IMG/VR virus record: IMGVR_UViG_3300025012_000027
Coordinates: 1-64,000 of that record
Direction: 5' to 3' (one strand)
Length of the DNA stretch: 64,000 nucleotides
Part shown: positions 3,605 to 18,679 of the stretch, in pieces
Layout of the letters: each line of letters begins with the position of its first letter
Position numbering within the stretch: the first letter of the stretch is position 1
Notes under the pieces: generated by a model
Told to the model about the DNA's origin: nothing
The model's database searches: none
Seen by the model: the letters and a program-made list of their open reading frames with translations, nothing else
Made by a program: the position numbers and the translations under genes

Positions 3605-3609
3605 TAGCA

Positions 3610-3615
3610 TAAATA
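3610..3615 (+). promoter_or_regulatory. T4-type late promoter (TAAATA)
   Basis: CATAAATA in intergenic gap, 20 nt upstream of ATG 3636; gp55/gp33 are encoded in the window. Confidence 0.6.
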
Positions 3616-3635
3616 TAGTTTTACATTGGTATATT

Positions 3636-4199: not shown

Positions 4200-4206
4200 A
4201 TATACT

Positions 4207-5523
4207 ATGAATCCATTAGCAACAGTTGAGTTTTTTATACATATAAATCAGTTTGAAAAAGCTAAAATAGTTCTCGATTTATTAAAACCATATGCAAGAT
4301 CCGTGCAAGAGATTGATCAGTTAGGTAAGCTATATGCCGATATACGAGAATTTGCCGACACTCTCGAATTAGGGCAACGGATATATGAGTTAGTTGACCA
4401 CCCTCAAGCAAAGTATGATTCTAGAGTGAACATAATACGAGCATTGCTTAATCTGAATAAGCCAAATGAAGCTCTTGAACTCATTCTGATAAACGAACAA
4501 GAGCAGCCTGACGATCATCCAAATCAGATGGATAAGGCGATGTGTTTTTTCCTATTAGACCAAAAGGATTCTGGCGAAGCCATTCTTAGACAAATATTAT
4601 CTGAGCCGCACACTCAAGATATCGATAATCGGGTGAGGTTCAATCTTGGCACATATGACTTGCGCAACGGTAATTTTAAACAAGGCCTGCGAGAGGTTTT
4701 GCTAGGCGGCAGGAAACTTAACATATGGCATGAATTCAAGTTTCCAAAATCTCAATTGTGGGAAGGCAATCCGCAACCAGGCAAACGCATTCTCGTATGC
4801 GCTGAGGGTGGAATAGGAGATGAGATAATATCGGTTAGATTCATGAAGCATTTGCGCGATGCTGGGATGCTCCCGATTTGGTACACTGATAGAGAAGATA
4901 TTCGGACTATCTTCACTCGGAATGGTTTTGAAACAACCACTAACATAAGCATATTACCGGCCGACTGGTTATGGACGTATTCTATGCCTATACCATCATA
5001 TCTAGATCTATCAGAGGATGCTGTGTGGTATGGTCCATATATTTCACCTACCAATCAAACACCAAAATTATCCACTTCAGGAAAGAAGAAGATTGGTATA
5101 AAGTGTATGGGCAACCCTAAGTATGATCAAGATTTACATAGGACAGTACCTTTCATAGAATTGATAGACAGCATTCCAGATGAATATGAGATATACTCGT
5201 TTCATATAGATGAAGATTTCACCCACCCCAGAGTCATCCAGTTGAAAGATAAGATACACTCGTGGGATGATACCTTGGATTATATAACCCAAATGGATAT
5301 CATTGTTTCTAGCTGTACTTCTTTGATACATGCGGCGGGTGCTATGGGCAAATCATCGATCGTCATTGTGCCTATACTAACGTATTACACATGGGCAAAA
5401 CCTGGTCTGAGGTCTTTGTGGTATGGCGATAATTTACGGGTCTTGAGGCAGGTTGAATATGACAACTGGTCCGCTCCCCTTAATGAACTCAACAAAATAC
5501 TATGCCCGTCAAATACCGTATAA
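4207..5523 (+). CDS. TPR-repeat + glycosyltransferase family 9-like protein
   Basis: Helical N-terminus; WEG..GKRILVCAEGGIGDEI, MDIIVSSCTSLIHAAGAMG, WY..LRVLRQ motifs. Confidence 0.75.
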   Translation: MNPLATVEFFIHINQFEKAKIVLDLLKPYARSVQEIDQLGKLYADIREFADTLELGQRIYELVDHPQAKYDSRVNIIRALLNLNKPNEALELILINEQEQPDDHPNQMDKAMCFFLLDQKDSGEAILRQILSEPHTQDIDNRVRFNLGTYDLRNGNFKQGLREVLLGGRKLNIWHEFKFPKSQLWEGNPQPGKRILVCAEGGIGDEIISVRFMKHLRDAGMLPIWYTDREDIRTIFTRNGFETTTNISILPADWLWTYSMPIPSYLDLSEDAVWYGPYISPTNQTPKLSTSGKKKIGIKCMGNPKYDQDLHRTVPFIELIDSIPDEYEIYSFHIDEDFTHPRVIQLKDKIHSWDDTLDYITQMDIIVSSCTSLIHAAGAMGKSSIVIVPILTYYTWAKPGLRSLWYGDNLRVLRQVEYDNWSAPLNELNKILCPSNTV

Positions 5524-5858
5524 TAAATATCAACTTAACATCCTCGGTGTCCGATGCTCCTATAGCTGATGTGCCATGCAATGGGTGCATTAGGTGCTGT
5601 GAATTATTGACTCCCTTCCTAACCCCCGAAGAACTGAGTTCTGGCCTATACCCTATAAGTCTGATTCAACCGTCTGAAGATGCCGTGTTAGCAACACCTG
5701 ATATAGGCCCTCTGATTTCACTATATCGGAAGCCAGATGGTGGGTGTAGTATGCTAGTCGATGGACAGTGTACAATATATGACATTAGGCCAAAAGCGTG
5801 TCGACAATTCGATTGCCGTAAAGGACATCATCCCAAAATCCCCAACATGACGATATAA
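5502..5858 (+). CDS. YkgJ-family (CxxCxxCC) cysteine-cluster protein
   Basis: CNGCIRCC ... CSML..CTIYDIRPKACRQFDC. Confidence 0.8.
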   Translation: MPVKYRIININLTSSVSDAPIADVPCNGCIRCCELLTPFLTPEELSSGLYPISLIQPSEDAVLATPDIGPLISLYRKPDGGCSMLVDGQCTIYDIRPKACRQFDCRKGHHPKIPNMTI

Positions 5859-5859
5859 T

Positions 5860-6651
5860 ATGGAAAAAACTTATCACTTTCTTTCAGGACTTCCTAGATC
5901 AGGTTCCACCGTTTTAGCATCAATACTGAATCAAAATCCCGAGGTATATGTTACCCCAACTTCACCTATGCTAAACGTGGCAGTAAAAATGCAAGAGGCA
6001 TGGCGCAACGATCCCACGGTTAAAGCAAATTACTACGAAGAACAAGCGCGCGATTTGACTAAAGCTATCCTGCCAGCATTTTGGAAACACCGGCCTGAAT
6101 CTATTATCATCGATAAAGGAAGAGGGTGGGCTAAGAATATGCCAACCGCATCGGCACTGTTTGGTAAAAAAATTAAAGCTATCGTGATGACTCGTGATCT
6201 TCCTAGCATAATGGCTAGTTGGTTGACAATCATCAGAAACCAACCTGGGTGTTTTGTTGATAAGAATCTCTTGTTAACCGGGCATCTCGTTACAGATGAA
6301 AATAGAGTCGGTGAGATGTGGTTTAATATGGTTAAAGATTGTATGGAGGGGCTTCATCAAATAAAGAGAGAGGCGGCCGACCAAATTGTCATCGTAGAAT
6401 ATGACAAATTTATAGAAACCCCGATGGTAGAGCTTGATAGGATTGCAGACTTTCTGCAATTGCCGTCATTCGAGTATGACGTAAATACGATAGAAAATGA
6501 TACAGCTGATGATGATTTGATTGCATGGGGGTTTGAAGGATTACATACCATCAGGCCTGTGTTAGGGAAAACGTCAAAACACCCTCGTGAAGTTTTGGGT
6601 GATATGCTGTATTATCGATTCGTCGAACTTGAAAAACAATACATTCTTTAA
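5860..6651 (+). CDS. Sulfotransferase family protein
   Basis: 5'-PSB motif LSGLPRSGSTVLASILNQNP, IIDKGRGW, MTRDLPSIMAS. Confidence 0.85.
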   Translation: MEKTYHFLSGLPRSGSTVLASILNQNPEVYVTPTSPMLNVAVKMQEAWRNDPTVKANYYEEQARDLTKAILPAFWKHRPESIIIDKGRGWAKNMPTASALFGKKIKAIVMTRDLPSIMASWLTIIRNQPGCFVDKNLLLTGHLVTDENRVGEMWFNMVKDCMEGLHQIKREAADQIVIVEYDKFIETPMVELDRIADFLQLPSFEYDVNTIENDTADDDLIAWGFEGLHTIRPVLGKTSKHPREVLGDMLYYRFVELEKQYIL

Positions 6652-6657
6652 GTTTAT

Positions 6658-7092
6658 ATGAAAAAGATTCTCATTATGGGACTACCTGGATCTGGAAAAA
6701 CCTTTTTAGCGTCTGCTCTGAAAGATCGATTGATCGATTCGAACAAGACCGTTGACTGGTTTAACGCAGATGATATCAGGCGCAGATATGATGATTGGGA
6801 TTTTTCAACCGACGGTCGCATTAGACAGTCCGTGAGGATGGCACAGCTCGCCAATGAATCAGTATCTGATTTTGTAATTGCTGATTTTGTCGCACCGCTC
6901 ATAAAAATGAGGGAAAATTTCAATTCCGATTACACTATATGGGTTGACACGATCGATAAGAGCAGGTATCCAGATACGAATATAGCATTCATCCCGCCAA
7001 CGACGTATGATTTTAGAGTAACTGAGCAGAATTCTGACCATTGGGCTAGTATCATCGCAAATTCTATTCTAAGAGATCGGTGTTGGTTATAG
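6658..7092 (+). CDS. cysC: Adenylyl-sulfate (APS) kinase-like P-loop protein
   Basis: ILIMGLPGSGKT, NADDIR, DFSTDGRIRQ, ADFVAP; adjacent to the sulfotransferase. Confidence 0.75.
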   Translation: MKKILIMGLPGSGKTFLASALKDRLIDSNKTVDWFNADDIRRRYDDWDFSTDGRIRQSVRMAQLANESVSDFVIADFVAPLIKMRENFNSDYTIWVDTIDKSRYPDTNIAFIPPTTYDFRVTEQNSDHWASIIANSILRDRCWL

Positions 7093-7108
7093 TAGCAGCG
7101 TGAACGAC

Positions 7109-7203
7109 GCTTAAATAGTATGAGTAACTAATTGGATACCTTATGCGACTAACTCTAGAAGAAACACAATACCTGTTAGATGAATCTACTCAACATCTAA
7201 CCG
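7109..7203 (+). repeat. Copy 1 of late-promoter + 5'-gene repeat
   Basis: 92/95 nt identical to 15353-15447; contains TAAATA 7112-7117 and ATG 7143. Confidence 0.95.
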
Positions 7204-7244
7204 CGCGAGTTGCGGCAATCGATCCAGAAGGAGGTATACTGTGA
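7143..7244 (+). CDS. 33-aa chimeric mini-ORF (N-terminus of gene 15387 fused to unrelated tail); possibly a pseudogene/leader peptide
   Basis: MRLTLEETQYLLDESTQHLTARVAAIDPEGGIL*; its TGA overlaps the GTG start of 7241. Confidence 0.45.
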   Translation: MRLTLEETQYLLDESTQHLTARVAAIDPEGGIL

Positions 7245-7759
7245 AAGCAAGCTACATTTACATTCCGCTCATCGGCCTGTTCAGGGTATTTTTATCATTT
7301 ACTGCGCCAATAGTCGTACTGCTGGCCCTACCGTTTATCAAATGGGATAAAGAGCCTTCCGTTGGTCCACAAAGAACCAATCCTCCAACGCCCACGATCA
7401 TGGGCGATTTCCCGAACTGGCTCTCGTGGCTCAGTACTCCAGATCAACGATTACCATGTGATACAGGTATACCAACATGTAAAGCATGGGTAGATCGGTA
7501 TGGTAAGTGGGTAGCTGCTTGGTTATGGGCTGGAGTGCGAAATCAGTATTTCGGATTCGCTATATGGCTAGGCAACCAAACTTCCAACTATGCTCCCTAC
7601 GACATTGAAGGCTATTGGGAGCGTACCGACCAATATGGTACGATTTGGAGGTATCGGAAGACTTTTGGTAAGATCAGCATCATGACCGGATACAATGTTT
7701 ACGCTATGCTAGATGGATCTTTCCATACAGCGCCAATCCTCACAGTTAAACTTCGTTGA
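7241..7759 (+). CDS. Hypothetical membrane-associated phage protein
   Basis: GGAGG SD before GTG; hydrophobic N-terminus, Trp-rich (WLSWLSTPD, WLWAGVRN). Confidence 0.7.
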   Translation: MKASYIYIPLIGLFRVFLSFTAPIVVLLALPFIKWDKEPSVGPQRTNPPTPTIMGDFPNWLSWLSTPDQRLPCDTGIPTCKAWVDRYGKWVAAWLWAGVRNQYFGFAIWLGNQTSNYAPYDIEGYWERTDQYGTIWRYRKTFGKISIMTGYNVYAMLDGSFHTAPILTVKLR

Positions 7760-7781
7760 CATTATCATTACTGGCTGACAA

Positions 7782-7864
7782 CTTAAATAGTAAGAGTAAC
7801 TAATTGGGATACCTCATGCAACTAACTCTAGAAGACACGCGACAGCTAACCGAGGAACTGCTGC
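7782..7864 (+). repeat. Copy 2 (diverged, 24-nt in-frame deletion) of late-promoter + 5'-gene repeat
   Basis: cttaaatagtaagagtaactaattgggatacctcatgcaactaactctagaaga...gctaaccgaggaactgctgc aligns to 15354 onward. Confidence 0.9.
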
Positions 7865-7908
7865 GGGCGAAAACAACTTCTCGAATCGGTGCTCGATGTA
7901 TCAAGTAA
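7816..7908 (+). CDS. 30-aa mini-ORF derived from the N-terminus of gene 15387
   Basis: MQLTLEDTRQLTEELLRAKTTSRIGARCIK*. Confidence 0.4.
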   Translation: MQLTLEDTRQLTEELLRAKTTSRIGARCIK

Positions 7909-7922
7909 ATTTGGAGTAAAAT

Positions 7923-8552
7923 ATGAATATTGACTTTACCTATGCAATAACAAGCGTCAATCACGCAACAAAAACTATGATGGTATCGTATTCTGCCACC
8001 AATTACCCAACGGTATCCAAAGAGGTGCGCATACCATGGCGTGAAGAAGATCTCGATATCGTATTGCGAGAGTATGCTCCGTACGGCGTGTGGTGGGCAT
8101 ATAATAAGCCAACTAAAGATATTGTTGTAGGTACTAAAGGATTGATCAACTCTCAAAATAAGCCTGCTGTAAAGGTAATTCCACAAACTGATGTAAACAC
8201 CGTTAAAGCAGAGCAAATATCTAAAATTGCGCAATCTAGATATCTGTATGAGACGAGTGGTATAAATATAAACGGCACTCGATTCAAAACGGATCGCGAA
8301 TCGCAGGCAGCTATCACATCAGCATTTATCAGTCTATCGCAGGGATTATTGACTACGGTAGATTGGAAAACTGAACCTTCTGTATGGATTACGTTAGATT
8401 TGCAGAAAATTACTGATGTCTACAATGCAGTTATGACTAAAGTGCAATTGGGGCATACTACAGAAAAAGAATTGGTCACATCTATCAATAACGTCGATGC
8501 CAAATTAGACAACGCTATCAAACTCATTGAGGATATCGTATGGCCTCAATGA
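7923..8552 (+). CDS. DUF4376-domain tail-fibre-associated protein
   Basis: IAQSRYLYETSGININGTRFKTDRESQAAI..VDWKT..IVWP. Confidence 0.75.
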   Translation: MNIDFTYAITSVNHATKTMMVSYSATNYPTVSKEVRIPWREEDLDIVLREYAPYGVWWAYNKPTKDIVVGTKGLINSQNKPAVKVIPQTDVNTVKAEQISKIAQSRYLYETSGININGTRFKTDRESQAAITSAFISLSQGLLTTVDWKTEPSVWITLDLQKITDVYNAVMTKVQLGHTTEKELVTSINNVDAKLDNAIKLIEDIVWPQ

Positions 8553-9448
8553 GTTTGTATGTGCCTTTGCCGGATCAAGAAGTCGGCATTCTATCATATA
8601 AGCCAATATTGGATGAGTTAGACATCACAATTACGTCCATTAAAAATACATCGGCTTATGCTTTTCCTGTATCAAACAGAGGAACTAGCTACTGTGGGGA
8701 TCATCCTAAATACATGTCACTTGAGAGTCTAAATACTCTGACATATAAGAGTGAGCTACATAAAACAGGCATACTTACCATTCCGACAGAAATTGTTCAA
8801 GAAATTGGAGATACTTCTTTATATTTTTTCAAGCCAAATTCTATATTTAGCAACGAACTTGTAAGACGCCCAAGGGTTGCGAGCCCTATCGCCCAGTATG
8901 AAGTGACGTTTTCTGTAAATGAATTCAATGAGATCTATGTGTTTAATACATCGAGACACATATTTAATAATGCAGATACGTCTGGGGCTTGTGTACAGAC
9001 ATCTGAAAATAGTGTAGAATCCATCTATATGATAGATCAAGTGAGACAAGCTGTTATTAGATTAAACGTTCGTGGTGGCATACATAATGTGCAGTTTATA
9101 TATTATAATAACGAATTAGTTTTAATAGACTGGAATGCTAGACCACCAACAGTTCTTACCGAAGGTTTCGCAGCATATAACCATCCTAATATCATTAGTA
9201 CGGTAAGACACGCACTCGGACTCCCAATTCTGCCAAGAGAACCTATGTCTGTTATTTTTAGAGATTATTCGGATAATCCTATACCCGTTTCAAAACGGGA
9301 TCTTATCGTTAGTTTTGGACTACTTCCTAGAAAAGTTTGGGGTAAAGGGATTGATTATCCATTCATACGAGTCAGTGGGCTTGGATCTTCGGATGAAGAG
9401 CTGAATTCGAGATTTGATCAAATGGAACTGGCAGTATTTAGTAATTAA
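8540..9448 (+). CDS. ATP-grasp-fold protein (divergent)
   Basis: FFKP, YEVTF, GIHNVQFIYYNNELVLIDWNARP resemble ATP-grasp motifs. Confidence 0.6.
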   Translation: MASMSLYVPLPDQEVGILSYKPILDELDITITSIKNTSAYAFPVSNRGTSYCGDHPKYMSLESLNTLTYKSELHKTGILTIPTEIVQEIGDTSLYFFKPNSIFSNELVRRPRVASPIAQYEVTFSVNEFNEIYVFNTSRHIFNNADTSGACVQTSENSVESIYMIDQVRQAVIRLNVRGGIHNVQFIYYNNELVLIDWNARPPTVLTEGFAAYNHPNIISTVRHALGLPILPREPMSVIFRDYSDNPIPVSKRDLIVSFGLLPRKVWGKGIDYPFIRVSGLGSSDEELNSRFDQMELAVFSN

Positions 9449-9450
9449 CT

Positions 9451-10527
9451 ATGTTTTATTATTTTGATGATGGTACAAAATGTACATCGAAGATAGAAGC
9501 TATAAAATATGGTTTGGCGAAACAATTAACTCCGAAGTTTTATTATTACGATCACATCTATGAAAAATTAAATTGGAGTGTCGAACCATCTCAAAGTTTA
9601 GATTACTATTATAAAGAACAAGCTCAAAATATTAGAGATAATTATGATTATGTAATTTTAGCATATTCTGGTGGGTATGACTCAACCAATATACTTGAAA
9701 CCTTTCATTTCAATAATATAAAATTAGATAAGATATTGATCGTCGGCGCATTTAAACAAGATAGCTCATATGGAGTCGATGAAAACCATAATGGAGAATT
9801 GTATCATAACGCATTTCCATATGTAAAGGATCTTGGCTTGGACCATATCACTCAAGTTATAGACTATACAGAGTTATTCGATAGCACAAAAAACTTTAGT
9901 ATTTCAGTATATAACGAGAATTGGGTTGATACCATTGGAGCGTGGTTCAGTCCTCATAATTGGTTCTGGAAAGATGTAGAGAGGCACATTGTTCCACTAG
10001 AGTGGAGAGGTAAACGAGTCGCTCTAGTATTTGGTAAAGATAAACCCGGACTGTATCACAATGTTCATGCAACCCGTCGCGGTATAGGAATTCAAGGCGA
10101 TGCCCTTAATCCAACGGGATTTCATTTTAGAGACACGCCGTGTTTAAGTTACGCAGATACTAATGCAGATGAAAGTATTGACAGAGTAAACTTTTACTGG
10201 GATCCTGAAAACCCACAAATTTTATTAAAACAATTGCATGTGATTAAGAGAGTAACTGAAATAAATGAAATTGCTCCGCTCAAGTTACTAAATATAAATG
10301 AAATTGTGTACAGTCTCAAACGACCTTTGTTATTTAAGTCACCGAAGAGCGGTAGTAACTTATTTAGTCTTAGAGATGAATACTTAAAGACCAATAAGGC
10401 ATCTGATGTATTTTCTTTATATGCCGCTGGAATTAATAAGATAGACCGAGAAATAGGGGTAAGTAATATTGGTCCTATATTTTCCAAACATTATAGCATG
10501 CTAAGTGGCTTGCACGCGATAACGTAG
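9451..10527 (+). CDS. PP-loop (adenine nucleotide alpha-hydrolase-like) protein
   Basis: VILAYSGGYDSTNIL PP-loop. Confidence 0.65.
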   Translation: MFYYFDDGTKCTSKIEAIKYGLAKQLTPKFYYYDHIYEKLNWSVEPSQSLDYYYKEQAQNIRDNYDYVILAYSGGYDSTNILETFHFNNIKLDKILIVGAFKQDSSYGVDENHNGELYHNAFPYVKDLGLDHITQVIDYTELFDSTKNFSISVYNENWVDTIGAWFSPHNWFWKDVERHIVPLEWRGKRVALVFGKDKPGLYHNVHATRRGIGIQGDALNPTGFHFRDTPCLSYADTNADESIDRVNFYWDPENPQILLKQLHVIKRVTEINEIAPLKLLNINEIVYSLKRPLLFKSPKSGSNLFSLRDEYLKTNKASDVFSLYAAGINKIDREIGVSNIGPIFSKHYSMLSGLHAIT

Positions 10528-10537
10528 AAAGAATGAT

Positions 10538-11527
10538 ATGACAATAAAAACTTCCGGGTCTCTTTCATTAAATGAAATCAATTCTGAATTTGGGAGAGGG
10601 TATAACTTAAACGCATATAGAGGCACTTCCTATTGGAATAGTAACGCTACTCTGGGTACGTTTTCAAGCGTAGCTATTTCAATCAATGATTTTTTTGGTA
10701 AGGCTCTATCTCGACCACCCATCACCGCTCAAGTATTGGTTGTGGGTGGTGGTGGAGGCGGCGGTTCTGGAACACATGATTCTGTTGGCGGTGGAGGGGG
10801 CGGTGGAGGGGGCGGTCAATTCTTATCATTTGATGTAACATTATACCCCGGTGCTCCAGCTTCAATTAGTATAGGGGGTGGTGGTGCCGGTGGATACTAT
10901 TACATCTACTATACCGGCCCTTATGGTGACCAAGCTAATTATGCGTATGTAGCAGGGAATACTGGTGGATCCAGTTCTGCAGTATTCAATGGATCTACAT
11001 ACACTGCGGTAGGGGGGCTATATGGTCACCAAAGATGGTATAATGGTGAAAGCTTTACTGTTGACCCAACCCCATATGTTGGTGGGGCAGGTGGTTCGGG
11101 TAATGGCGGGGGTGGGTATGCATCTGCAGGTGGATCAGACGGTATTAGAGCAGGCGGGGGTGGTGGTGGTATAGATGATCAATCGACAGCTGGAGTAGGC
11201 GGAGCGGGTCCGCTGTGGTTTAATGGGTCTAGATATTCGGGTGGTGGTGGTGGTGGTGCTGATGGGTCCGGTCAAGCTTCGGGTGGCGCAGGTGGCGGCG
11301 GAACTGGCGGGTCATCTATGAATGGAACGGCAGGCGCAGCCAATACCGGTGGTGGCGGAGGTGGTGGTGGGTCATCGGGTTTTGTAACCAATGCAGGGGC
11401 CGGTGGCTCAGGCATAGTGATCATTAGATATGTTAGCAGTTTCGCATTCTTCAGTGGTGGGTCAGCGTATTCATCTGGTGGCTACATATACCATGTGTTT
11501 ACGTCTAATGCGTCATTTACAACATAA
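10538..11527 (+). CDS. Glycine-rich tail-fibre adhesin (gp38-like architecture)
   Basis: N-terminal SGSLSLNEINSEFG..ISINDFFGK anchor; many poly-Gly runs; GSGIVIIRY..YHVFTS end. Confidence 0.7.
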   Translation: MTIKTSGSLSLNEINSEFGRGYNLNAYRGTSYWNSNATLGTFSSVAISINDFFGKALSRPPITAQVLVVGGGGGGGSGTHDSVGGGGGGGGGGQFLSFDVTLYPGAPASISIGGGGAGGYYYIYYTGPYGDQANYAYVAGNTGGSSSAVFNGSTYTAVGGLYGHQRWYNGESFTVDPTPYVGGAGGSGNGGGGYASAGGSDGIRAGGGGGGIDDQSTAGVGGAGPLWFNGSRYSGGGGGGADGSGQASGGAGGGGTGGSSMNGTAGAANTGGGGGGGGSSGFVTNAGAGGSGIVIIRYVSSFAFFSGGSAYSSGGYIYHVFTSNASFTT

Positions 11528-12345
11528 TGAATTCATATAATAATTGGATCACGTCTAATGTATCTCAACGATTGACTAATCCCTTAGCCAAATTAAAGTT
11601 AGACATGAAAGTTCCTCTATTCGAGCAAAGGAACTTTCATGAATGTGCATCTGAAGCCGCGCAGCTTATTGCAAAAACTCATGATAATATATATGTGGCA
11701 TTAAGTGGAGGTATGGATTCTGAGTATATTGTTAGAACTTTTCATAAAAACAACGTACCGTTCACCCCAATCATATTAGAATGTGGGAATGAGATAGAGA
11801 GAAGGTACGCTTTTAAAGTATGCGAAGAATTGCGGCTATCTCCTGTCGTTCTACACTTATCAGAAGAAGATATGGTAGATAAATTCTATGAGTCAATCCA
11901 CAAAAAACTTAATGGGGTGGGTTATCATGCTACATTGGTTCTAGCTATCGCAGAGTATGTATACAGTAAACGAGGGGTGTTAGTAACGGGGGATGGATTT
12001 TTTGGAGATGGTGATGAATTGGTTACCGATACTGAGTTTGCTTTATACAATGAATGGGATGATTATATAGACTCTTTAGTTGATATAGATAACATTGGGT
12101 TCTTTCTATATACCCCACAATTGTTATATTCGATGTTTCCTAAAACGTATACTGCATGGAATATTATCAAAACAGAGTTGTATGGTATTGAATATAGGCG
12201 CAAGATGCGCCCTAGGTACAGGGACGACACACTAAATAAACTGCACAGTATAAATTCTAAGGTGATTTATACTTTAGGGAATAATATTTGTAATGTTATT
12301 TATACGAAACAAGAAATTTTAGAAATTTTTAATACGAAGGAATGA
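11527..12345 (+). CDS. Second PP-loop (asparagine-synthase-like C domain) protein
   Basis: IYVALSGGMDSEYIV; LVTGDG. Confidence 0.65.
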   Translation: MNSYNNWITSNVSQRLTNPLAKLKLDMKVPLFEQRNFHECASEAAQLIAKTHDNIYVALSGGMDSEYIVRTFHKNNVPFTPIILECGNEIERRYAFKVCEELRLSPVVLHLSEEDMVDKFYESIHKKLNGVGYHATLVLAIAEYVYSKRGVLVTGDGFFGDGDELVTDTEFALYNEWDDYIDSLVDIDNIGFFLYTPQLLYSMFPKTYTAWNIIKTELYGIEYRRKMRPRYRDDTLNKLHSINSKVIYTLGNNICNVIYTKQEILEIFNTKE

Positions 12346-12352
12346 AATTATT

Positions 12353-13084
12353 ATGAAAAAACTTATAGCACTTGCATTATTGGCTATTTCAATTACATGC
12401 TCAGCTGCACCAATTGAGTTTGTTGTAACGGCATCTGCAGGGGGGCCTAATGATACCGTGACTAGAAAAATAGTAGAAAAAATCTCTACTGAAACTGATT
12501 TGACATTTGTTGTGGTGAATAAGCCGGGTGCTGCACATGTAATTGGCTATAACTTTACAATGAATAGTAAAAAACCCACATTAATTTTATCTACCCCTGA
12601 AATTGCGAATCATGACGTGTATTTACAATTAGATGAACTTTTCACAGTAGGGTATTTTACTAACACTATTTTTGTTTCAACAAAGTCAAATATCACAAAC
12701 ATTAATCAATTAGCTGAATTATCCAAACATAGAGACGTGAATTTTGGGAGTGGTGGTCCGGGAACGTATAGTCATAAAGCAATGGAAATTGTGTGTAAGT
12801 CAACTTTAAAATGTCTATCAGTACCATACAAATCTGGAGCAGAGGGTATGTTAGCCGTAATGACTGGGCAAATAGATACATACGCACTAGTATCATATGG
12901 TTCTTATCAATTTTTGAATAATGATAAGGTTAAAGCGATACATGAAATACAAATGCTGAAAAATGATAATTGGTTAAAGCTATTTGCTAAAAATGTATCT
13001 AATGAAGATAGAGAAAAGATTATGCGAGTGCTAAATTCTCTGAATAAAGAATTCTTCTACGAAATGGGATTTGAAAAACAATAG
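12353..13084 (+). CDS. tctC: Tripartite tricarboxylate transporter substrate-binding protein (TctC/Bug family), compact
   Basis: Signal peptide; PIEFVVTASAGGPND, VVNKPGA, FGSGGPG, VPYKSGAEG..AVMTGQID. Confidence 0.85.
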   Translation: MKKLIALALLAISITCSAAPIEFVVTASAGGPNDTVTRKIVEKISTETDLTFVVVNKPGAAHVIGYNFTMNSKKPTLILSTPEIANHDVYLQLDELFTVGYFTNTIFVSTKSNITNINQLAELSKHRDVNFGSGGPGTYSHKAMEIVCKSTLKCLSVPYKSGAEGMLAVMTGQIDTYALVSYGSYQFLNNDKVKAIHEIQMLKNDNWLKLFAKNVSNEDREKIMRVLNSLNKEFFYEMGFEKQ

Positions 13085-13125
13085 TGCTGCGGTGAGTAAT
13101 ATCCAGTAACATATAACTCTAAATA

Positions 13126-14409
13126 ATGACTTTTGCTATATTATTAGGCCTACTTGCAGGCATTTTTAGTGGTATTATACCTGCCGTAGGAAACTTTACT
13201 ACTATTATACTGTTCATACCATTATTAACTAAATTTAATGTGTATGAGTTGGTGTTGTTTTATATGACACTAACGGCGATAAGTCAATACGTCTGTAGCA
13301 TACCCGCTATATTGTTTGGTATACCTGGAGAAACCAGTAGTATTCCGGTCGTCCAAGAATCCAAAAATCTATCCTGGTCTGAAAAGGTCGAGGCCCTCGT
13401 AGGATGCGCATACGGTAGTTTTATAGGTACTGTGAGTGTGTTCGTATGCATTTACGTATTCTCGAGTCATATAGAGCGCATCGTGCAACCGATGTTCACC
13501 TCGTATATCCTAGCCAGTATGCTATGCGTGTCTTTAATAGCCATCTGCTTGGTGTCTAACAAATCTGCGTGGTTCAGTGTGTTCAATGCTATGTTAGGCG
13601 CAGGTCTTGCGCTGATTGGCATAAACACGTTTTTCAACATCCATTTTACGTTTGGTTTTAGCCTCTTCTCTGGAGGAATCCCAGATATCTTAGTCATCAC
13701 CTTTCTGCTAGGATTTCCGGAACTATATCAAAACGCTAAAATACAAGCGGTCAATCTTCAATTGACCCAAATCGATCACAGACCGTTTACAGCCATAGTT
13801 TTGCCTAAGTGGTATGTTAGTTTGAGTGCGACAGTGGTGGGGGCGCTCGGTGGTATTGTGCCCGGTCTTACCTTCATTGCTAGCAGCAGTATCGCACATA
13901 CTGTTTCAAAGTGGGCGAACGTGCCTGCGTTGCAGAGAATATTTGCTAGCGAATCTGCTAACAATGCTGGGTCTGTAACACAGCTATTACCGTTATTATT
14001 GTTTGCTATCCCGATATCAGGGGGTGAGGCACTTATTCTTATGATGTTGAACCAACAGGCATTCAGCGTGTCGACATATAGTTTCTCATCCATATACGAT
14101 TATGTTGGATACAATTTTCTCATTGTAAATATGTTGGGGTTAGCGATAACATTAGCATTATCGTATGCAGCGTCAAAAGTTACTCGCATCAATGTGCGTC
14201 ATATCGTCACTTTTGCGATGATTGTTATGGTGTCGTCTATTATGTATGAGAGTTTTAGTAAAGGGGTGTTTTTAAATTATGTTTTGATATCTGTATTCTT
14301 ATTACCTTTAGGGTGGGTATTACGCAACCGGAATAATATGCCGTTAGTGTTTTCTTTTTTAGTTTTTGATCGGCTCACAGAAGCTGTATATCGTGTTTTT
14401 ATTTTATGA
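13126..14409 (+). CDS. tctA: Tripartite tricarboxylate transporter large permease (TctA family)
   Basis: Polytopic membrane protein; GIIPAVG, PAILFGIPGETSS, GIVPGL, ASESANNAG, PLLLFAIP signatures. Confidence 0.85.
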   Translation: MTFAILLGLLAGIFSGIIPAVGNFTTIILFIPLLTKFNVYELVLFYMTLTAISQYVCSIPAILFGIPGETSSIPVVQESKNLSWSEKVEALVGCAYGSFIGTVSVFVCIYVFSSHIERIVQPMFTSYILASMLCVSLIAICLVSNKSAWFSVFNAMLGAGLALIGINTFFNIHFTFGFSLFSGGIPDILVITFLLGFPELYQNAKIQAVNLQLTQIDHRPFTAIVLPKWYVSLSATVVGALGGIVPGLTFIASSSIAHTVSKWANVPALQRIFASESANNAGSVTQLLPLLLFAIPISGGEALILMMLNQQAFSVSTYSFSSIYDYVGYNFLIVNMLGLAITLALSYAASKVTRINVRHIVTFAMIVMVSSIMYESFSKGVFLNYVLISVFLLPLGWVLRNRNNMPLVFSFLVFDRLTEAVYRVFIL

Positions 14410-15305
14410 GGACTCTTATGTTTTTAAAATTTATCGTTTCATGCGTTGTATTGTTTAGCAGCGCTTTCGCGTCTGCAGATTCTCTCAAATTAGTATCGCC
14501 GGGATCACAATCGGGCGGCTATATGATTCAACTAGCTGCATATGCTAAAGATCTGTCAAAGGACTATACGATTTCGGCGGTAGCGGCTGGTAATCTGTGT
14601 GAAGCTCTCAAACAAGTATCGGAAAATACTCCGACGCTGTTGCTATGGGGCAATGACTATGAAGCTGAGTATCGTCGAAATATCTGCGGTAATGTTCCGA
14701 ATAATCTAAACTTACGGGATATGATTAGGTTTAATACGAACTCATATATGGTTTGCTCGATTACTCACAAGAAGCCCGAGTTTCTAACAAAGACGGTCAC
14801 TGGTAGAATTGCTCATAGCGTTCCTCGCGACATGTTTACGGCAACTATCAATGAGATCAATGCGACCTTTGGGACTAGTTATGCAGCAATCCCATATAAC
14901 GGCACTGGATTGGCTAGATTAGCATTGGTTAGTGGTGAAGTAGATTATGCAATTCTCCCTAACGAGCATCGTCCATATATTGAACAAAAGGGCGGCGATT
15001 GTTTCTATGTGTTAGGCGATACCGGATCAAACTATCCGACGATCGAAGACTTGCAAAAGTTGGCCCCGACGAAAAAACTAACTCTATCGCTGAACCACGG
15101 ATTGTTTCTGTTGCATGCATCAAAGGCTGAACGAGAAAAAATTGTTACTACGCTGAAGGGGTTGCACGCTGACTGCAACAGCGGAATTGGCATGCATACA
15201 AAATGTGGTAAAGACTTTTTCCCTGTTTGGAATATTACTCCAACATTGGCATCGGCGTGGGAAGCTGAGGTGCTCTCATTTGGAAAGTTTTTAGCCAGTA
15301 AGTAA
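14406..15305 (+). CDS. Second, divergent TctC-like periplasmic binding protein
   Basis: Signal peptide; LVSPGSQSGG; IPYNGTGLARLALVSGEVDY. Confidence 0.6.
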   Translation: MRTLMFLKFIVSCVVLFSSAFASADSLKLVSPGSQSGGYMIQLAAYAKDLSKDYTISAVAAGNLCEALKQVSENTPTLLLWGNDYEAEYRRNICGNVPNNLNLRDMIRFNTNSYMVCSITHKKPEFLTKTVTGRIAHSVPRDMFTATINEINATFGTSYAAIPYNGTGLARLALVSGEVDYAILPNEHRPYIEQKGGDCFYVLGDTGSNYPTIEDLQKLAPTKKLTLSLNHGLFLLHASKAEREKIVTTLKGLHADCNSGIGMHTKCGKDFFPVWNITPTLASAWEAEVLSFGKFLASK

Positions 15306-15317
15306 CGTTTTTGCAGC

Positions 15318-15350
15318 GCCAACATCCCGTTAAAATTCGTTGATGTTGGC
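15318..15350. other. Inverted repeat (9-bp stem, 15-nt loop) just upstream of the late promoter
   Basis: gccaacatc ... gatgttggc. Confidence 0.6.
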
Positions 15351-15352
15351 CT

Positions 15353-15447
15353 GCTTAAATAGTATGAGTAACTAATTGGATACCTTATGCAACTAACTCT
15401 AGAAGAAACACAATACCTGTTAGATGAATCTACTCAACCGCTAACCG
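15353..15447 (+). repeat. Copy 3 (intact source) of late-promoter + 5'-gene repeat
   Basis: TAAATA 15356-15361 followed by start of the 749-aa ORF. Confidence 0.95.
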
Positions 15448-17636
15448 AGGAACTGCTGCAGGTATTGGTTGAAAATCGTATCGAGTACATAAAATCTGCA
15501 ATGGCGGACAAGCTGTCAACTGCACACGATCCAGAATCTAGCAATTTGTCTGCTGGTAAGATCATAGATCACATCGCAAAGAAAGTTGACCCAACTACTC
15601 GCAAGACTCAAACTGAATGGCTCGTTAATCGATACCATGCAGGCGAGTTTAAATTAGGCGATTCCAAGGCAATCAAGAAGACTATGTCTACGTATGAGGA
15701 AGCCGTCCCTCATATGGAAAACAAAGACATCAAGTCGTTCAAATCACTAGGAGATCTTCGAGACGCCGTTGCAACGACCCACGTCAAGCGTAAGATGGTA
15801 GATGCATCGGATAATCAGCCCGTCGAGACCGGCGAAACGAAACTGTATGATCAGGATGGTGTTCAGGGGTTCAAGTTAACTAACAAGAAAACGAGTATCC
15901 ACAATTACGGCCCTAATGGCAAAGTTGCAAAGACTAGTTGGTGCACTGCATCTGAAGGGGCCAACAATCAGTTTGCTGGATATGCTGGTGGGAAATACCC
16001 TATGAGATTCCCTAATGGTGAAGTATTGCAAATCCACCATCAATCTGCTCAACTGCAGGATGTCAATAACAGACCGGTTTCGATGGCCGATCCTAGATTT
16101 GCGCCATACAAAGAACACATTGAGAATTTCATCAAGCAAACGGCAGACTCAGAGAATCTTGCATCGCCGAGCGAATTGGTGAAGCGACACGTGCCAACAT
16201 CATCGGATGAACTACAACCGTTGATCGATAAGCATACTGCGTTGATGGCACCCGTCCACGCAAAAACATATGTACCTTATGGTCATTCGCGTCATGTGCG
16301 CGAAGCAATGAACGACATTAAGGATGTAATTCAAAGATCTCGTATTACCGATCCTCAATTTGAACATCTTAAGAATGTGTCTACGCTGGATGGGTGGAAT
16401 GATACCCCCGAGCCAGCACGTCTATCGAATTGGTTAGCTAACAGCCCACACTTACAGCCGCATCAGGTAACTAGCCTCGTTGATGATTTAGTTAACAGAC
16501 CATCGGACGCTGACGACGAGAACTTCAAACCCATATTAGTTCACCCAAACATTTCCGACCATGACATACATAAATTGATTGGATGGAGTGGCGCAACAGA
16601 TAAAGCACACACATCTGCTCGTAGATCTTTTCTATTGAACACACCAAGCATCAAAGAAGAGCATTTGGACCGAATCAACCCGTCCATTGACGAACGGGAA
16701 GCGATGATTGATAGGTCTATGGCCAAAAGCATCCCAGATGATTATTTCAGAGACGTGATGCATAAGACCCCACACGTCGTTGCAGAAAACCCAATCACAC
16801 CCGCCCACGTTCTGCGCGAATTGCATGATACGAAAGCCGCCACTCCAGCATTGCATACGAGCTTGCTGAAAAACCCAAATTTACCAAAAGACGTGTTCAT
16901 GAAAGCGGTGACCGCGGATCTAGTTCATCCAGTTGATACAAATATACGAGTGGCAGTTGAACGCCCAGATCTAGAACCATCGGAAAGATCTATGGTCGTT
17001 AAGCGTCATATGGATGGTAAGTTGAATGATACGGGATTTGGAAGCTTTGCAGCATCTAATCGTCTATCAAGAGATGATATACACACAATAATAAACCACC
17101 CTGATTTGGATATTCGTCGAATGCAATCCGTCATTAGCAATCCGAAAATTCGGCACGGTGAATTAGAACGTATAGTGAATCACCCTAAATTCTCATCTGA
17201 TGTCATAAGTGATGTGATCGAGTCTCCATACATTAGATCTTCTACGGTAGATGCGCTAACTAGCTTGCCTGAGCATAATCGTGAAGTGCTTGATCAGATA
17301 TCTAAGACGCATTCAACAGCTATTGAGGGGCGTCACTTGACGCAGGTGTTGAGTCATCCGACGACAAATTTTGCGACTAAAGTGGCAGCACTTAAACATC
17401 CAGCAAACACTCCTGAACATTTTCATATGTTGAAAGACAATCCTAGATTTCATGGAGCTATAAGCAACAGTGTTAACGCACCTCCATCTATATTGCATGG
17501 GTTGTCCTCATCTCCAGCCGATCACGTCAGACTGAACGTTGCGAATAACCCAAACACCGAACCATCGACCCTGAATATTTTGTCGACTGATTCGGTCCCA
17601 GAAATTGCAGCAGTAGCAAAGAAGAAACTGAAATGA
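15387..17636 (+). CDS. Large protein with WCT motif and C-terminal HEAT/LRV-like helical repeats; possible internal head protein
   Basis: TSWCTA motif; repeated AxNPxxPxxxL units (VAENPITPAHVL, VRLNVANNPNTEPSTL); late promoter. Confidence 0.55.
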   Translation: MQLTLEETQYLLDESTQPLTEELLQVLVENRIEYIKSAMADKLSTAHDPESSNLSAGKIIDHIAKKVDPTTRKTQTEWLVNRYHAGEFKLGDSKAIKKTMSTYEEAVPHMENKDIKSFKSLGDLRDAVATTHVKRKMVDASDNQPVETGETKLYDQDGVQGFKLTNKKTSIHNYGPNGKVAKTSWCTASEGANNQFAGYAGGKYPMRFPNGEVLQIHHQSAQLQDVNNRPVSMADPRFAPYKEHIENFIKQTADSENLASPSELVKRHVPTSSDELQPLIDKHTALMAPVHAKTYVPYGHSRHVREAMNDIKDVIQRSRITDPQFEHLKNVSTLDGWNDTPEPARLSNWLANSPHLQPHQVTSLVDDLVNRPSDADDENFKPILVHPNISDHDIHKLIGWSGATDKAHTSARRSFLLNTPSIKEEHLDRINPSIDEREAMIDRSMAKSIPDDYFRDVMHKTPHVVAENPITPAHVLRELHDTKAATPALHTSLLKNPNLPKDVFMKAVTADLVHPVDTNIRVAVERPDLEPSERSMVVKRHMDGKLNDTGFGSFAASNRLSRDDIHTIINHPDLDIRRMQSVISNPKIRHGELERIVNHPKFSSDVISDVIESPYIRSSTVDALTSLPEHNREVLDQISKTHSTAIEGRHLTQVLSHPTTNFATKVAALKHPANTPEHFHMLKDNPRFHGAISNSVNAPPSILHGLSSSPADHVRLNVANNPNTEPSTLNILSTDSVPEIAAVAKKKLK

Positions 17637-18526
17637 CACTAAAACAGACAAAAATAGGCGACGATAAGATTTTATATTCTGATTCGGAAACGAACGATCC
17701 GGTCGCTACTGCTAGGATCATACCTGACAGGTGGAATCGTCGGGACAAAGTGTATCATCTCGCATGGCATCCGAATATGAAGACATTGTACCCAACAGGT
17801 ACATCATCACTAACATTAAGGAACTTTTCCCCATCTAAGTCAGCGAGCGAATCGATTGGTACGGCCGTTTCACATTATGATCAATTAGTTAATGGGCCCG
17901 AGAATCCAGACCCACTCAAAGTGACTGATACTGGGGAAATGGTTGAGAAGTCTATTGAAGGACATGCAGACCCGCATAAGTTCTCACACTTTCATATACA
18001 CGATCCAAAAACTGACCAACCCGTCGCGTCTTTGTTCATCAATAAATCGAGTATGGCCGAGCCATTGGATGCAGATGGTAGGTTCACTCACCACAAGCAT
18101 GCGCATGTTGTCTATCATGGTGACGAACCATCAGAAGAACAAGCAAATGTGCTTGCAAGGAAACACCCAGGTGGGTCGCCTCTGTCACTAGTAAATCGAG
18201 TAAAGACATGGTTGGAAACTAGGACCAAGACTCCAAAATTTGTTGGTAGTCATTCGTCTTCTGGATTCAAATCATACAAGACATCTCTGCCAGTAGAGAA
18301 GGCAGGCCAAGAGTACGTTGATCATATAAAAACACAGTATTCGTTTAAAAATCATTCATTCAAAGAAGTTGGCCCAGGCATGTTCATGGGATCGGCTGAT
18401 GGGTATGATGGCACTAACCACGAACTTATTGATGCAAGAACTCCTGGCGTCATTACCCACCATTCGTTTAACTCAAAACCAGCTGATCACTATTCATCAA
18501 AGAAGTTGAACGATGTCGTTTACTAA
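17633..18526 (+). CDS. Hypothetical protein
   Basis: 297-aa ORF, ATGA-coupled to upstream gene. Confidence 0.7.
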   Translation: MTLKQTKIGDDKILYSDSETNDPVATARIIPDRWNRRDKVYHLAWHPNMKTLYPTGTSSLTLRNFSPSKSASESIGTAVSHYDQLVNGPENPDPLKVTDTGEMVEKSIEGHADPHKFSHFHIHDPKTDQPVASLFINKSSMAEPLDADGRFTHHKHAHVVYHGDEPSEEQANVLARKHPGGSPLSLVNRVKTWLETRTKTPKFVGSHSSSGFKSYKTSLPVEKAGQEYVDHIKTQYSFKNHSFKEVGPGMFMGSADGYDGTNHELIDARTPGVITHHSFNSKPADHYSSKKLNDVVY

Positions 18527-18601
18527 AACATATACGTAGGTATTACTAGGGACAAAGAACCTGTTGTAGACGCTCCTAATAGCGTCTAGCAGTATAAACA
18601 C

Positions 18602-18679
18602 ATGGTGTCTGTAGCAGCAAGTGCAGATCCAGACAACTACAATTTCTCTACCGGGTGGACAGACCACTATCAAGTATGA
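18602..18679 (+). pseudogene. Remnant C-terminus of a DUF4376-like gene
   Basis: MVSVAASADPDNYNFSTGWTDHYQV* resembles the 'DPxxYxFSxGW' DUF4376 terminus; ATGA-coupled to next gene. Confidence 0.4.

What the first reader, a model, noticed from the sequence alone, without database searches (positions are those of the whole stretch)
7109..15447. Triplicated late-promoter + gene-start element delimiting accessory cassettes (candidate cassette-accretion system)
Seen: the TAAATA late promoter, leader and first codons of the 749-aa gene (15353-15447) recur at 7109-7203 (92/95 identical) and at 7782-7864 (diverged, 24-nt in-frame deletion). The copies sit exactly at module borders: end of the RCC1/sulfation module, then single gene 7241, then the 7.4-kb adhesin/enzyme/transporter module, then the intact gene. 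Short hairpins precede copy 1 (agcgt/acgct, 7097-7111) and copy 3 (15318-15350). Inference: foreign cassettes were repeatedly inserted at this promoter, each inheriting late expression. Different divergence of the copies suggests successive events. The direct repeats would allow excision, amplification or exchange by phage recombination. This is a late-promoter analogue of the early-promoter PeSL cassettes known in T4-type phages.
Basis: partly seen in the sequence, partly recalled or inferred. Interest (0 to 1): 0.8.

Follow-up and report, generated by a model that had tools for sequence, protein, structure and literature searches.

The report
Nested recombination scars at late promoter
A groundwater T4-like phage carries three copies of one virion gene's late promoter and first codons; they are most likely leftover scars of two stacked insertions of accessory genes into a variable genome region, not a dedicated cassette system.

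Summary
Copy 1 (7109-7203) and copy 3 (15353-15447) are 92/95 identical. Copy 2 (7782-7867) is a diverged copy with a 24-nt gap. There are no other copies in the 216-kb contig, IMG/VR or the JGI metagenomes. Three assemblies agree on the structure.

New finding: the copy 2 / copy 3 homology runs upstream of the promoter, into the last 32 nt of the DUF7338 gene (7728-7759 vs 15314-15343). The repeated unit is therefore a piece of an ancestral "DUF7338 - late promoter - 749-aa gene" locus, not a free-standing regulatory element.

TAAATA lies upstream of the 749-aa gene's homologs in 12 of 14 related loci. In some of them the gene directly follows the capsid gene gp23 (an empty site); others carry unrelated cargo there. 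The 7.4-kb cargo recurs collinearly (72% nt) in another phage contig, where it has its own TATAAATA.

Best reading: two nested out-of-register recombination events stacked alternative cargos. Each duplicated the promoter plus 20-25 codons, leaving short ORFs of 33 and 30 aa. The PeSL analogy holds for outcome only. There are three copies, no sigma-70 promoter, one strong hairpin and no recombinase.

The parts
6658..7092 (+). APS-kinase-like gene, the last gene of the left (RCC1 / methyltransferase / sulfotransferase) block
   Evidence: Pfam APS_kinase E 5.6e-9. The gene call in the public assemblies is 6676-7092.
7097..7111 (+). Weak 5-bp hairpin (AGCGT / ACGCT) overlapping the left edge of copy 1
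   Evidence: Fold of 7085-7125: -9.3 kcal/mol, z -1.85, 8/200 shuffles as good. Not significant.
7109..7203 (+). Copy 1: TAAATA (7112-7117), 25-nt leader, ATG at 7143 and the first 20 codons of the 749-aa gene
   Evidence: 92/95 identical to 15353-15447. Promoter and leader are identical; the 3 differences all lie in the coding part.
7143..7244 (+). 33-aa ORF: the N-terminal fragment of the 749-aa protein reading into unrelated sequence. Its stop overlaps the GTG start of the DUF7338 gene (GTGA).
   Evidence: ORF list, translation aligned in A2, called as a gene in public assemblies. GGAGG at 7229-7233.
7204..7240 (+). 37 nt native to the DUF7338 gene (its ribosome-binding region); junction J1 at 7203/7204
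   Evidence: Homology to copy 3 ends at 7203. The motif AGGTATAyTGrTGAAA is shared with the DUF7338 homolog in L016.
7241..7759 (+). DUF7338 gene (172 aa), a single-gene cargo
   Evidence: Pfam DUF7338 E 6.9e-11. A homolog 67-68% identical in amino acids sits in unrelated contig L016 with different neighbours.
7728..7867 (+). Copy 2 (extended): last 32 nt of the DUF7338 CDS, spacer, TAAATA (7784-7789), leader, ATG at 7816 and an N-terminal fragment lacking 24 nt
   Evidence: Gapped local alignment to 15314-15462, 112/124 identical. The upstream part is significant on its own.
7816..7908 (+). 30-aa ORF: N-terminal fragment plus unrelated tail, ending 14 nt before the ATG of the next gene
7868..7922 (+). 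55 nt upstream of the cargo's first gene; junction J2 at 7867/7868. From about 7898 on the sequence is native to the cargo.
   Evidence: TATCaAGT..AAATTTGGAGTAAaATATG is shared with L020. GGAG ribosome-binding site.
7923..15305 (+). Cargo block M, 8 genes: DUF4376 tail-fibre-type, ATP-grasp-like, PP-loop/AsnS-like, Gly_rich_2, AsnS-like, TctC, TctA, TctC-like
   Evidence: Pfam/PHROG and Atlas leads. Collinear with L020 at 72% nt. GC dips to 33-37% against 42.8% for the window.
15314..15343 (+). Decayed remnant of a DUF7338 3' end (..AP..VKIR-stop, with a 2-nt deletion); junction J3 at 15313/15314
   Evidence: Aligns to 7728-7759 (the last 32 nt of the DUF7338 CDS). Score 33 vs a maximum of 26 in 2000 shuffles.
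15313..15354 (+). Strong hairpin between cargo M and copy 3, built partly from the remnant; no T-run follows
   Evidence: -24 kcal/mol, z -5.4, 0/200 shuffles. Not called as a terminator by the scan.
15353..15462 (+). Copy 3: the functional TAAATA (15356-15361), leader and start of the intact gene
15387..17636 (+). 749-aa gene, probably a late virion protein; the right border of the variable region
Evidence: Homologs at 45-47% in L005/L006/L009 with conserved downstream synteny. It sits directly after gp23 in L075-L078.

Best explanation
The three copies are recombination scars. The region upstream of the 749-aa late virion gene is a hyperplastic region of this T4-like lineage, and the gene's late promoter is its fixed right border.

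Two additive, out-of-register recombination events stacked alternative cargos in tandem instead of swapping them. They could have occurred between co-infecting related genomes that carried different cargo at this site. Equivalently, a recombination-generated circle carrying the homology could have integrated Campbell-style.

Inner event: an ancestral 'DUF7338 - promoter - gene' unit received the 7.4-kb block M. This duplicated about 140 nt, running from the last 32 nt of DUF7338 to codon 25 of the gene.

Outer event (younger, or between closer parents): the block 'DUF7338 - copy 2 - M' came to lie behind a second copy of the promoter plus 20 codons, next to the APS-kinase-like gene.

Each event needs one illegitimate joint in the first 20-25 codons of the gene. 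The rest follows from the phage's general homologous recombination; no dedicated enzyme is needed.

By-products are two short ORFs (33 and 30 aa) and two extra late-promoter copies. These copies probably do fire and add late transcription to the cargo downstream of them.

Shown: the repeat anatomy, the DUF7338 remnant, the conserved promoter motif, the variable site in relatives, and the mobility of M among phages. Inferred: the order of events, the type of recombination, promoter activity, and the prediction that the 95-nt repeats now allow loss of the 8.2-kb segment.
For: Repeat anatomy and nesting. The inner pair includes the 3' end of the upstream gene, so it is a piece of an ancestral locus. 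Only three copies exist, all at this locus. TAAATA lies within 90 nt upstream of the homologous gene in 12 of 14 loci, often after a terminator. It is enriched 12-50 nt upstream of starts in the window, 7 observed vs 1.1 expected. The site is variable in relatives: gp23 directly followed by terminator, promoter and gene in L075-L078; one gene between in L007; 1-4 small genes in L074/L072; other cargo in L005/L006/L009. No window cargo gene occurs in any of them, while the downstream genes are syntenic. Cargo M exists as a collinear block elsewhere (L020, 72% nt) with its own TATAAATA and the same ribosome-binding region. Its core occurs in 47 other viral contigs without the 749-aa gene. A cargo protein has relatives at 65-73% identity, whereas the flanking core gene's best relative is 47%. 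DUF7338 with the same ribosome-binding region sits in an unrelated phage context. No recombinase, transposase or nuclease domain was found in the blocks. T4 is documented to make duplications and deletions by recombination at short homologies: bioRxiv 10.1101/2022.04.14.488369, read.
Against: No close relative or alternative haplotype was found, so no before/after state is seen directly; the nearest homolog of the core gene is 47% identical. The parental sequences at the three joints are unknown, so microhomology cannot be scored. Both extra copies keep an intact TAAATA, leader and ATG, and copy 1 is identical to copy 3 over the promoter and leader. This could mean selection for function or ongoing gene conversion rather than passive scars. 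Two independent joints within 5 codons of each other hint at a preferred breakpoint or at selection. The rest of the 216-kb contig was searched only with exact patterns, so a strongly diverged fourth copy could have been missed.
Confidence: 0.68

Rival explanations
1. This is an active cassette-accretion and exchange element. The promoter-plus-leader-plus-first-codons segment would be a preferred landing pad, a late-promoter counterpart of PeSLs. It would repeatedly capture cassettes and release them as circles by homologous recombination between copies.
For: Direct repeats flank cargo at exactly the border of a hyperplastic region. The two joints fall within 5 codons of each other, at codons 20 and 25. 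Promoter, leader and ATG are kept intact in all copies. PeSL work shows that promoter-centred repeats can yield mini-circles in T4-type phages (PMC2839356).
Against: There are only three copies in 216 kb and none elsewhere in IMG/VR or the JGI metagenomes. None of 13 related loci has a second copy. The inner repeat carries part of the neighbouring gene, as expected of a duplicated target and not of a portable motif. A hairpin is present at only one copy. Assembled contigs show no deletion variant.
Confidence: 0.12
2. This is an assembly artefact: co-existing strain variants with different cargo at the same site were threaded in series through the shared promoter and gene start.
For: The data are metagenomic. 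The repeat is shorter than a read pair, and the nearby RCC1 repeats are assembled differently in different assemblies.
Against: Serial threading needs the joint sequences 7203/7204 and 7867/7868 to exist in reads. Three assemblies, one of them a k=127 MEGAHIT contig, are identical across all copies. The copies differ by SNPs and indels and have unique flanks within about 95 nt. The Logan contig breaks exactly where a true repeat would break a k=31 graph.
Confidence: 0.04
3. The extra copies are retained because they work as expression modules. Each would supply a late promoter, a translation start and a short upstream ORF that couples ribosomes to the cargo's first gene. Their origin would be as in the best explanation, but their maintenance would be by selection.
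For: All three copies keep TAAATA, leader and ATG. The stop of the 33-aa ORF overlaps the GTG start of the DUF7338 gene, with GGAGG in front; the 30-aa ORF ends 14 nt before the next ATG. The native late promoter seen before M in L020 is missing in the window, so copy 2 may replace it.
Against: About 13 stop-free codons after each joint is expected by chance roughly half the time (inference from stop-codon frequency). All genes from 80 to 22556 are co-directional, so read-through from upstream could express the cargo anyway. The leaders show no significant RNA structure. There is no expression data.
Confidence: 0.3

Closest known systems
PeSL (promoter-early stem-loop) cassettes of T4-type phages (Arbiol et al. 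2010, PMC2839356; Comeau et al. 2014, PMC4122927)
   Same: Repeated promoter-containing sequences in direct orientation border accessory genes in hyperplastic regions of T4-like genomes. Homologous recombination between copies can delete, insert or circularise what lies between. No dedicated recombinase is needed.
   Different: PeSLs are composite terminator plus sigma-70-type early promoter motifs, present in many copies per genome and not derived from a gene. Here the motif is late-type (TAAATA). There are three copies at one locus. Each carries 20-25 codons of one particular gene, and the inner pair also carries the 3' end of the upstream gene. Only one copy has a strong stem-loop.
Segmental duplications and deletions in T4 by recombination at short homologies (Srikant et al., bioRxiv 10.1101/2022.04.14.488369; it cites Wu et al. 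1991 and Kumagai et al. 1993)
   Same: Out-of-register recombination in a T4-type genome creates new joints and direct repeats. The repeats can bring a promoter in front of the duplicated genes.
   Different: Those events duplicate the phage's own segment in tandem. Here the material between the repeats is different, foreign-type cargo, which implies recombination between genomes with different content or insertion of a circle.
T4-type late promoter (TATAAATA, recognised through gp55/gp33; established knowledge)
   Same: An AT-rich -10-type motif with no -35 element lies 26-35 nt before the start codons of virion genes. Perfect TATAAATA occurs at the equivalent place in relatives L007 and L020.
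   Different: The window's version is CTTAAATA (6 of 8). No transcription start map exists, and no gp55 homolog was looked for outside the window.
Polymorphic internal-protein (ip) locus of T-even phages, where successive genes share the promoter and capsid-targeting-leader sequence (recalled from Repoila et al. 1994; not checked here)
   Same: A promoter plus the first codons of a head-associated protein is repeated at the start of successive units in a variable locus.
   Different: In the ip locus each repeat is fused in frame to a full gene. Here the fragments end in short ORFs and are not fused to the cargo.
Morons / moron accretion in tailed phages (established concept)
   Same: Foreign gene blocks are added between conserved genes, often with their own promoter and terminator.
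   Different: Morons are not normally bounded by duplicated pieces of the neighbouring gene.

Membership tests
PeSL regulatory cassette | Strong sigma-70-type early promoter (-35 and -10 boxes) | tested here: not met
   The copies carry TAAATA only. The sigma-70 scan lists no strong match inside the copies. The nearest is a 9/12 match at 7739-7768, and counts in the region are below the shuffle mean.
PeSL regulatory cassette | Stem-loop terminator immediately upstream of the promoter in each copy | tested here: not met
   There is a strong hairpin only before copy 3 (z -5.4), with no T-run. Copy 1 is weak (z -1.85) and copy 2 has none.
PeSL regulatory cassette | Many copies spread through hyperplastic regions | tested here: not met
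   Three copies in the 216-kb contig by exact-pattern scans. No other dispersed repeat in the 64-kb window.
PeSL regulatory cassette | Indels between close relatives that begin and end in the motif; mini-circles | not testable with these tools
T4-type late promoter | TATAAATA-like motif at a conserved short distance upstream of late (virion) genes | tested here: met
   TAAATA lies within 90 nt of the ATG in 12 of 14 homologous loci. In the window, 7 of 77 genes have it 12-50 nt upstream, against 1.1 expected (P about 1e-4; 0.02 if adjusted for local composition).
T4-type late promoter | Transcription starts a few bases downstream, late in infection, dependent on gp55/gp33 | not testable with these tools
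   There is no RNA data for this uncultured phage.
Recombination scar (partial target duplication from unequal or illegitimate recombination) | Direct repeats derived from the target locus itself, including truncated coding sequence, flanking unrelated DNA | tested here: met
   Copies 1 and 2 are truncated 5' ends of the 749-aa gene. A DUF7338 3' remnant precedes copy 3.
Recombination scar (partial target duplication from unequal or illegitimate recombination) | No element-encoded mobility enzyme | tested here: met
   Pfam, PHROG and Atlas leads give no integrase, transposase or homing nuclease in 80-15305. The 182-aa ORF at 1887-2435 remains unassigned, and the 438-aa gene at 4207-5523 has only sub-threshold TPR-type matches.
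Integron-like or site-specific cassette system | Integrase gene and short conserved recombination sites at cassette ends | tested here: not met
   No integrase was found. The repeats are 95-140 nt pieces of genes, not short sites.
Transposon insertion with target-site duplication | Short (2-15 bp) duplication, terminal inverted repeats, transposase | tested here: not met
   The duplications are 95 and about 140 nt. No inverted repeats were found at the block ends and no transposase.

The most novel reading that the evidence does not exclude
The promoter-plus-first-codons segment is a genuine recombination landing pad that this phage lineage uses again and again to capture late-expressed cassettes and shed them as circles. 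It would be a late-gene counterpart of PeSLs. The repeated codons might encode a capsid-targeting-type leader, as in the polymorphic T-even internal-protein locus.
Probability: 0.12. Interest if true: 0.6.

Novelty: new variant of a known kind. Interest (0 to 1): 0.38.

Why it matters
How hyperplastic regions of large phages grow is mostly inferred from comparing genomes. Here the intermediate footprints are still legible in one genome. Two nested duplications of a promoter and gene start, plus a remnant of the displaced neighbour gene, give the order and the breakpoints of two cargo additions. The locus shows that alternative cargos at one site can be stacked rather than swapped, and that each addition comes with a late promoter. 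It also predicts an unstable 8.2-kb segment whose loss should be detectable in the population. That offers a cheap test of recombination-driven gene flux in an uncultured groundwater phage. It is a clear example, not a new principle.

Tried and rejected
No statement on deletions, circles or depth is possible.

Closer relatives: megablast of 6600-18600 against GenBank phages gave nothing. Exact-pattern scans of IMG/VR and the JGI metagenomes returned only this contig. So a true empty-site sister genome was not found. The empty site is seen only at family level, in L075-L078.

DUF7338 as a conserved neighbour: its 67-68% homolog in L016 is followed by an unrelated 741-aa gene. It is absent from GenBank phages and from all loci that carry a homolog of the 749-aa gene. 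The ancestral pairing with the 749-aa gene therefore rests only on the remnant in this genome.

A further copy upstream: the ENA contig extends 8.3 kb beyond the window start. It holds tail-fibre genes and no further copy.

Known RNA element: Rfam gave nothing relevant in 6500-16000. The leaders do not fold better than shuffles.

Mobility genes in the cargo: none found.

Identity of the 749-aa protein: no PDB relative by sequence and only a sub-threshold LRV match in Pfam. Structure prediction was not run, as it would not bear on the repeats.

dN/dS between copies: too few sites to test.

Full report
SOURCE. The window is the first 64 kb of a 216,115-bp viral contig from a groundwater metagenome: IMGVR_UViG_3300025012_000027, which is JGI Ga0209727_1000022. 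Window coordinates equal contig coordinates. The genome is T4-like. The window encodes gp5-type hub/lysozyme, gp6-type baseplate wedge, gp32-type SSB, helicase loader, gp46/47-type nuclease and PhoH. Relatives of the focal gene sit beside gp18, gp19, gp20, gp21, gp22 and gp23 homologs.

OBSERVATION. The repeat is real.
- Copy 1 (7109-7203) and copy 3 (15353-15447) are 92/95 identical without gaps. The promoter motif and 25-nt leader are identical, and all three differences lie in the coding part.
- Copy 2 is diverged. The best gapped alignment is 7728-7867 vs 15314-15462, with 112 of 124 aligned columns identical, a 24-nt gap and a few small indels.
- Short probes from the promoter/leader and from the gene start each hit only these three places, with none in shuffles.
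- Exact-pattern scans of IMG/VR and the JGI metagenomes return only these three sites in this one contig.
- No other dispersed repeat of 40 nt or more exists in the window.
- The hairpin before copy 3 is strong (15313-15354, -24 kcal/mol, z -5.4). The one before copy 1 is not distinguishable from chance (z -1.85). Copy 2 has none.

IS IT AN ARTEFACT? Probably not.
- The JGI contig, an ENA MEGAHIT contig (k127) and a second ENA scaffold are base-for-base identical across all three copies. They likely derive from the same sample.
- A Logan contig of the same run ends at window 7138. That is exactly the last 31-mer before the sequence shared with copy 3, as expected if the repeat truly has two left contexts in the reads.

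A NEW ANATOMICAL POINT. Upstream of the promoter, copy 2 and copy 3 are still similar.
- The last 32 nt of the DUF7338 gene (7728-7759, ..APILTVKLR-stop) align with 15314-15343 (..AP..VKIR-stop, with a 2-nt deletion).
- The local score is 33, against a maximum of 26 in 2000 dinucleotide shuffles. Copy 1's upstream flank gives only background.
- The inner repeat therefore runs from the 3' end of DUF7338, through the spacer, promoter and leader, to about codon 25 of the 749-aa gene.
- The unit that was duplicated is a piece of an ancestral locus 'DUF7338 - promoter - 749-aa gene'. It is not a self-contained regulatory element.
- The strong hairpin before copy 3 is built partly out of this remnant.

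THE PROMOTER.
- TAAATA lies 26 nt before the ATG at 15387. In homologous loci from other phages the surrounding sequence is unrelated, yet TAAATA recurs within 90 nt of the start in 12 of 14 loci.
- Examples are CTTAAATA in L005, L006 and L009, and TATAAATA in L007. The motif often follows an intrinsic terminator.
- In the window, 7 of 77 genes have TAAATA 12-50 nt upstream, against 1.1 expected. They include a virion protein and a baseplate wedge gene.
- This fits the T4-type late promoter (consensus TATAAATA, established knowledge). No transcript data exist.

THE FOCAL GENE.
- The 749-aa protein has homologs at 45-47% identity in L005, L006 and L009. A conserved about 300-aa gene follows in all three, and ClpP-type protease and DNA-transfer-protein genes lie further downstream in L005 and L006.

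THE SITE IS HYPERPLASTIC.
- In L075-L078 the homolog follows the major capsid gene gp23 directly: gp23, terminator, TAAATA, gene. This is an empty site at family level.
- L007 has one gene in between. L074 and L072 have one to four small genes.
- L005, L006 and L009 have other cargo: tail-fibre-type proteins, an IS605 OrfB-type gene, DUF7936, sugar-nucleotide enzymes.
- None of the window's genes from 80 to 15305 has a homolog in any of these loci.
- In the window's phage the stretch upstream is at least 23 kb. It holds tail-fibre genes, then RCC1-repeat proteins, a methyltransferase, a sulfotransferase and an APS-kinase-like gene, then the two blocks studied here.
- None of the relatives has a second copy of the gene start.

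THE CARGO.
- DUF7338 (7241-7759) has a 67-68% identical homolog in an unrelated viral contig (L016). It shares the ribosome-binding region but has different neighbours.
- Block M (7923-15305) has eight genes: a DUF4376 tail-fibre-type protein, an ATP-grasp-like protein, a PP-loop/asparagine-synthase-like protein, a Gly_rich_2 protein, a second AsnS-like protein, TctC, TctA and a TctC-like protein.
- M is collinear at 72% nucleotide identity with Logan contig L020 (window 7899-13083 = L020 767-5919). L020 has one extra gene between TctC and TctA.
- In L020 the block is preceded by its own perfect TATAAATA, 52 nt before the ATG. The shared sequence with the window begins only about 25 nt before the ATG. 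The window's block has therefore lost its native promoter region, and copy 2 sits in its place.
- The core of M occurs in 47 further viral contigs, never together with the 749-aa gene or DUF7338.
- One cargo protein has relatives at 65-73% identity, while the adjacent core gene's best relative is 47%.
- Parts of M are 33-37% GC, against 42.8% for the window.
- No integrase, transposase or homing nuclease was detected in any block.

MECHANISM (INFERENCE).
- The layout is: APS kinase | P-N20 | DUF7338 - P-N25 | M | DUF7338 remnant - P - gene.
- Each step can be produced by one illegitimate joint between the first 20-25 codons of the gene in one genome and the upstream region of a cargo gene in a related, co-infecting genome. 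That second genome would carry different cargo at the same site. Homology downstream takes care of the rest.
- The topologically equivalent route is integration, by a single homologous crossover in the promoter/gene-start segment, of a circle cut out of such a genome.
- Either way the alternative cargos are stacked and the segment between the two breakpoints is duplicated.
- The outer pair (97% identical) is the younger event, or came from closer parents, than the inner pair (90%, with indels).
- T4 is known to make new joints at short homologies at high frequency. Recombination between promoter-centred repeats is known to give deletions and mini-circles in T4-type phages.
- The truncated gene starts remain as ORFs of 33 and 30 aa. 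The first ends in GTGA, overlapping the DUF7338 start codon. The open frames after the joints are short enough to be chance.
- The extra promoters probably fire and add late transcription. They may have been selected for this, since M's native promoter is gone. This is a partly overlapping rival, not an exclusive one.
- Prediction: the 95-nt, 97% identical repeats should allow loss of 7204-15447 at a measurable rate in a phage with T4-type recombination.

COMPARISON WITH KNOWN SYSTEMS.
- The closest described system is the PeSL. The resemblance is in outcome: promoter-bearing direct repeats at cassette borders in hyperplastic regions, with general recombination as the engine.
- The locus fails the defining PeSL features that could be tested. 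It has no sigma-70-type promoter, no stem-loop at each copy, and not many copies.
- It is not integron-like or transposon-like.
- It is best filed as a clear, nested example of partial target duplication by unequal recombination at a late promoter. That makes it a new variant of known phage mosaicism rather than a new kind of element.

VERDICT. Interest is moderate to low. The locus is a good teaching case and gives testable predictions, but it is a single locus in a single uncultured genome.

Noticed in passing
window 15387-15470; L005 10001-; L072 3541-; L074 9977-: The N-termini of the 749-aa protein family resemble the T4 capsid-targeting sequence MKTYQEFIAE: L074 MKTYLALLES, L072 MKSYQTLLES, L005 MHSYQELSKI; the window has MQLTLEE with L-x-E motifs. 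Together with the gene's position right after gp23 in L075-L078 and the virion-protein annotation of the PA5oct homolog, this suggests a protease-processed internal head protein. It is a resemblance only.
   Followed up: partly
window 7923-15305; L018-L070: A conserved phage accessory module combines a PP-loop/AsnS-like protein, a second AsnS-like protein, ATP-grasp and glycine-rich proteins with TctC/TctA tripartite-tricarboxylate-transporter components. Its core is found in 47 IMG/VR contigs, usually near a homolog of window gene 19319-20059 and a ClpP-type protease. Its function in a phage is unknown.
   Followed up: partly
window 80-7092 and L011 1-300, L085 7633-9400: An accessory block holds two or three RCC1-repeat proteins, a DUF4376 protein, a methyltransferase, a CxxCxxCC protein, a sulfotransferase and an APS-kinase-like protein (a possible sulfation pathway). 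The RCC1 region is assembled differently in the JGI and ENA contigs, probably by repeat collapse, and the JGI contig starts inside it.
   Followed up: partly
window 19169-19196: A perfect sigma-70 consensus promoter (TTGACA, 16 nt, TG, TATAAT) overlaps a 10-bp hairpin. It lies in the gap between genes 18655-19161 and 19319-20059, inside an otherwise late-looking co-directional gene run.
   Followed up: no
window 44385-44568: About five and a half tandem copies of a 39-nt unit (the two middle registers of the 67-nt family are identical) lie inside gene 43978-45072.
   Followed up: no
L020 5962-6375: The M-like block in L020 has an extra FA_hydroxylase-family gene between TctC and TctA. It is absent from the window, so this is a single-gene indel inside the cargo block.
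   Followed up: no
L005 1232-2503: An IS605 OrfB/TnpB-type gene lies among tail-fibre genes in the variable region upstream of the 749-aa gene's homolog in relative L005.
   Followed up: no
L007 13103-13339; L008 5198-17213: The 749-aa gene belongs to a paralog family. L007 has a second member two genes downstream. L008 has an array of six large genes: one is the homolog itself, one other has a weak match to it, and three carry faint LRV/HEAT-type Pfam hits.
   Followed up: no
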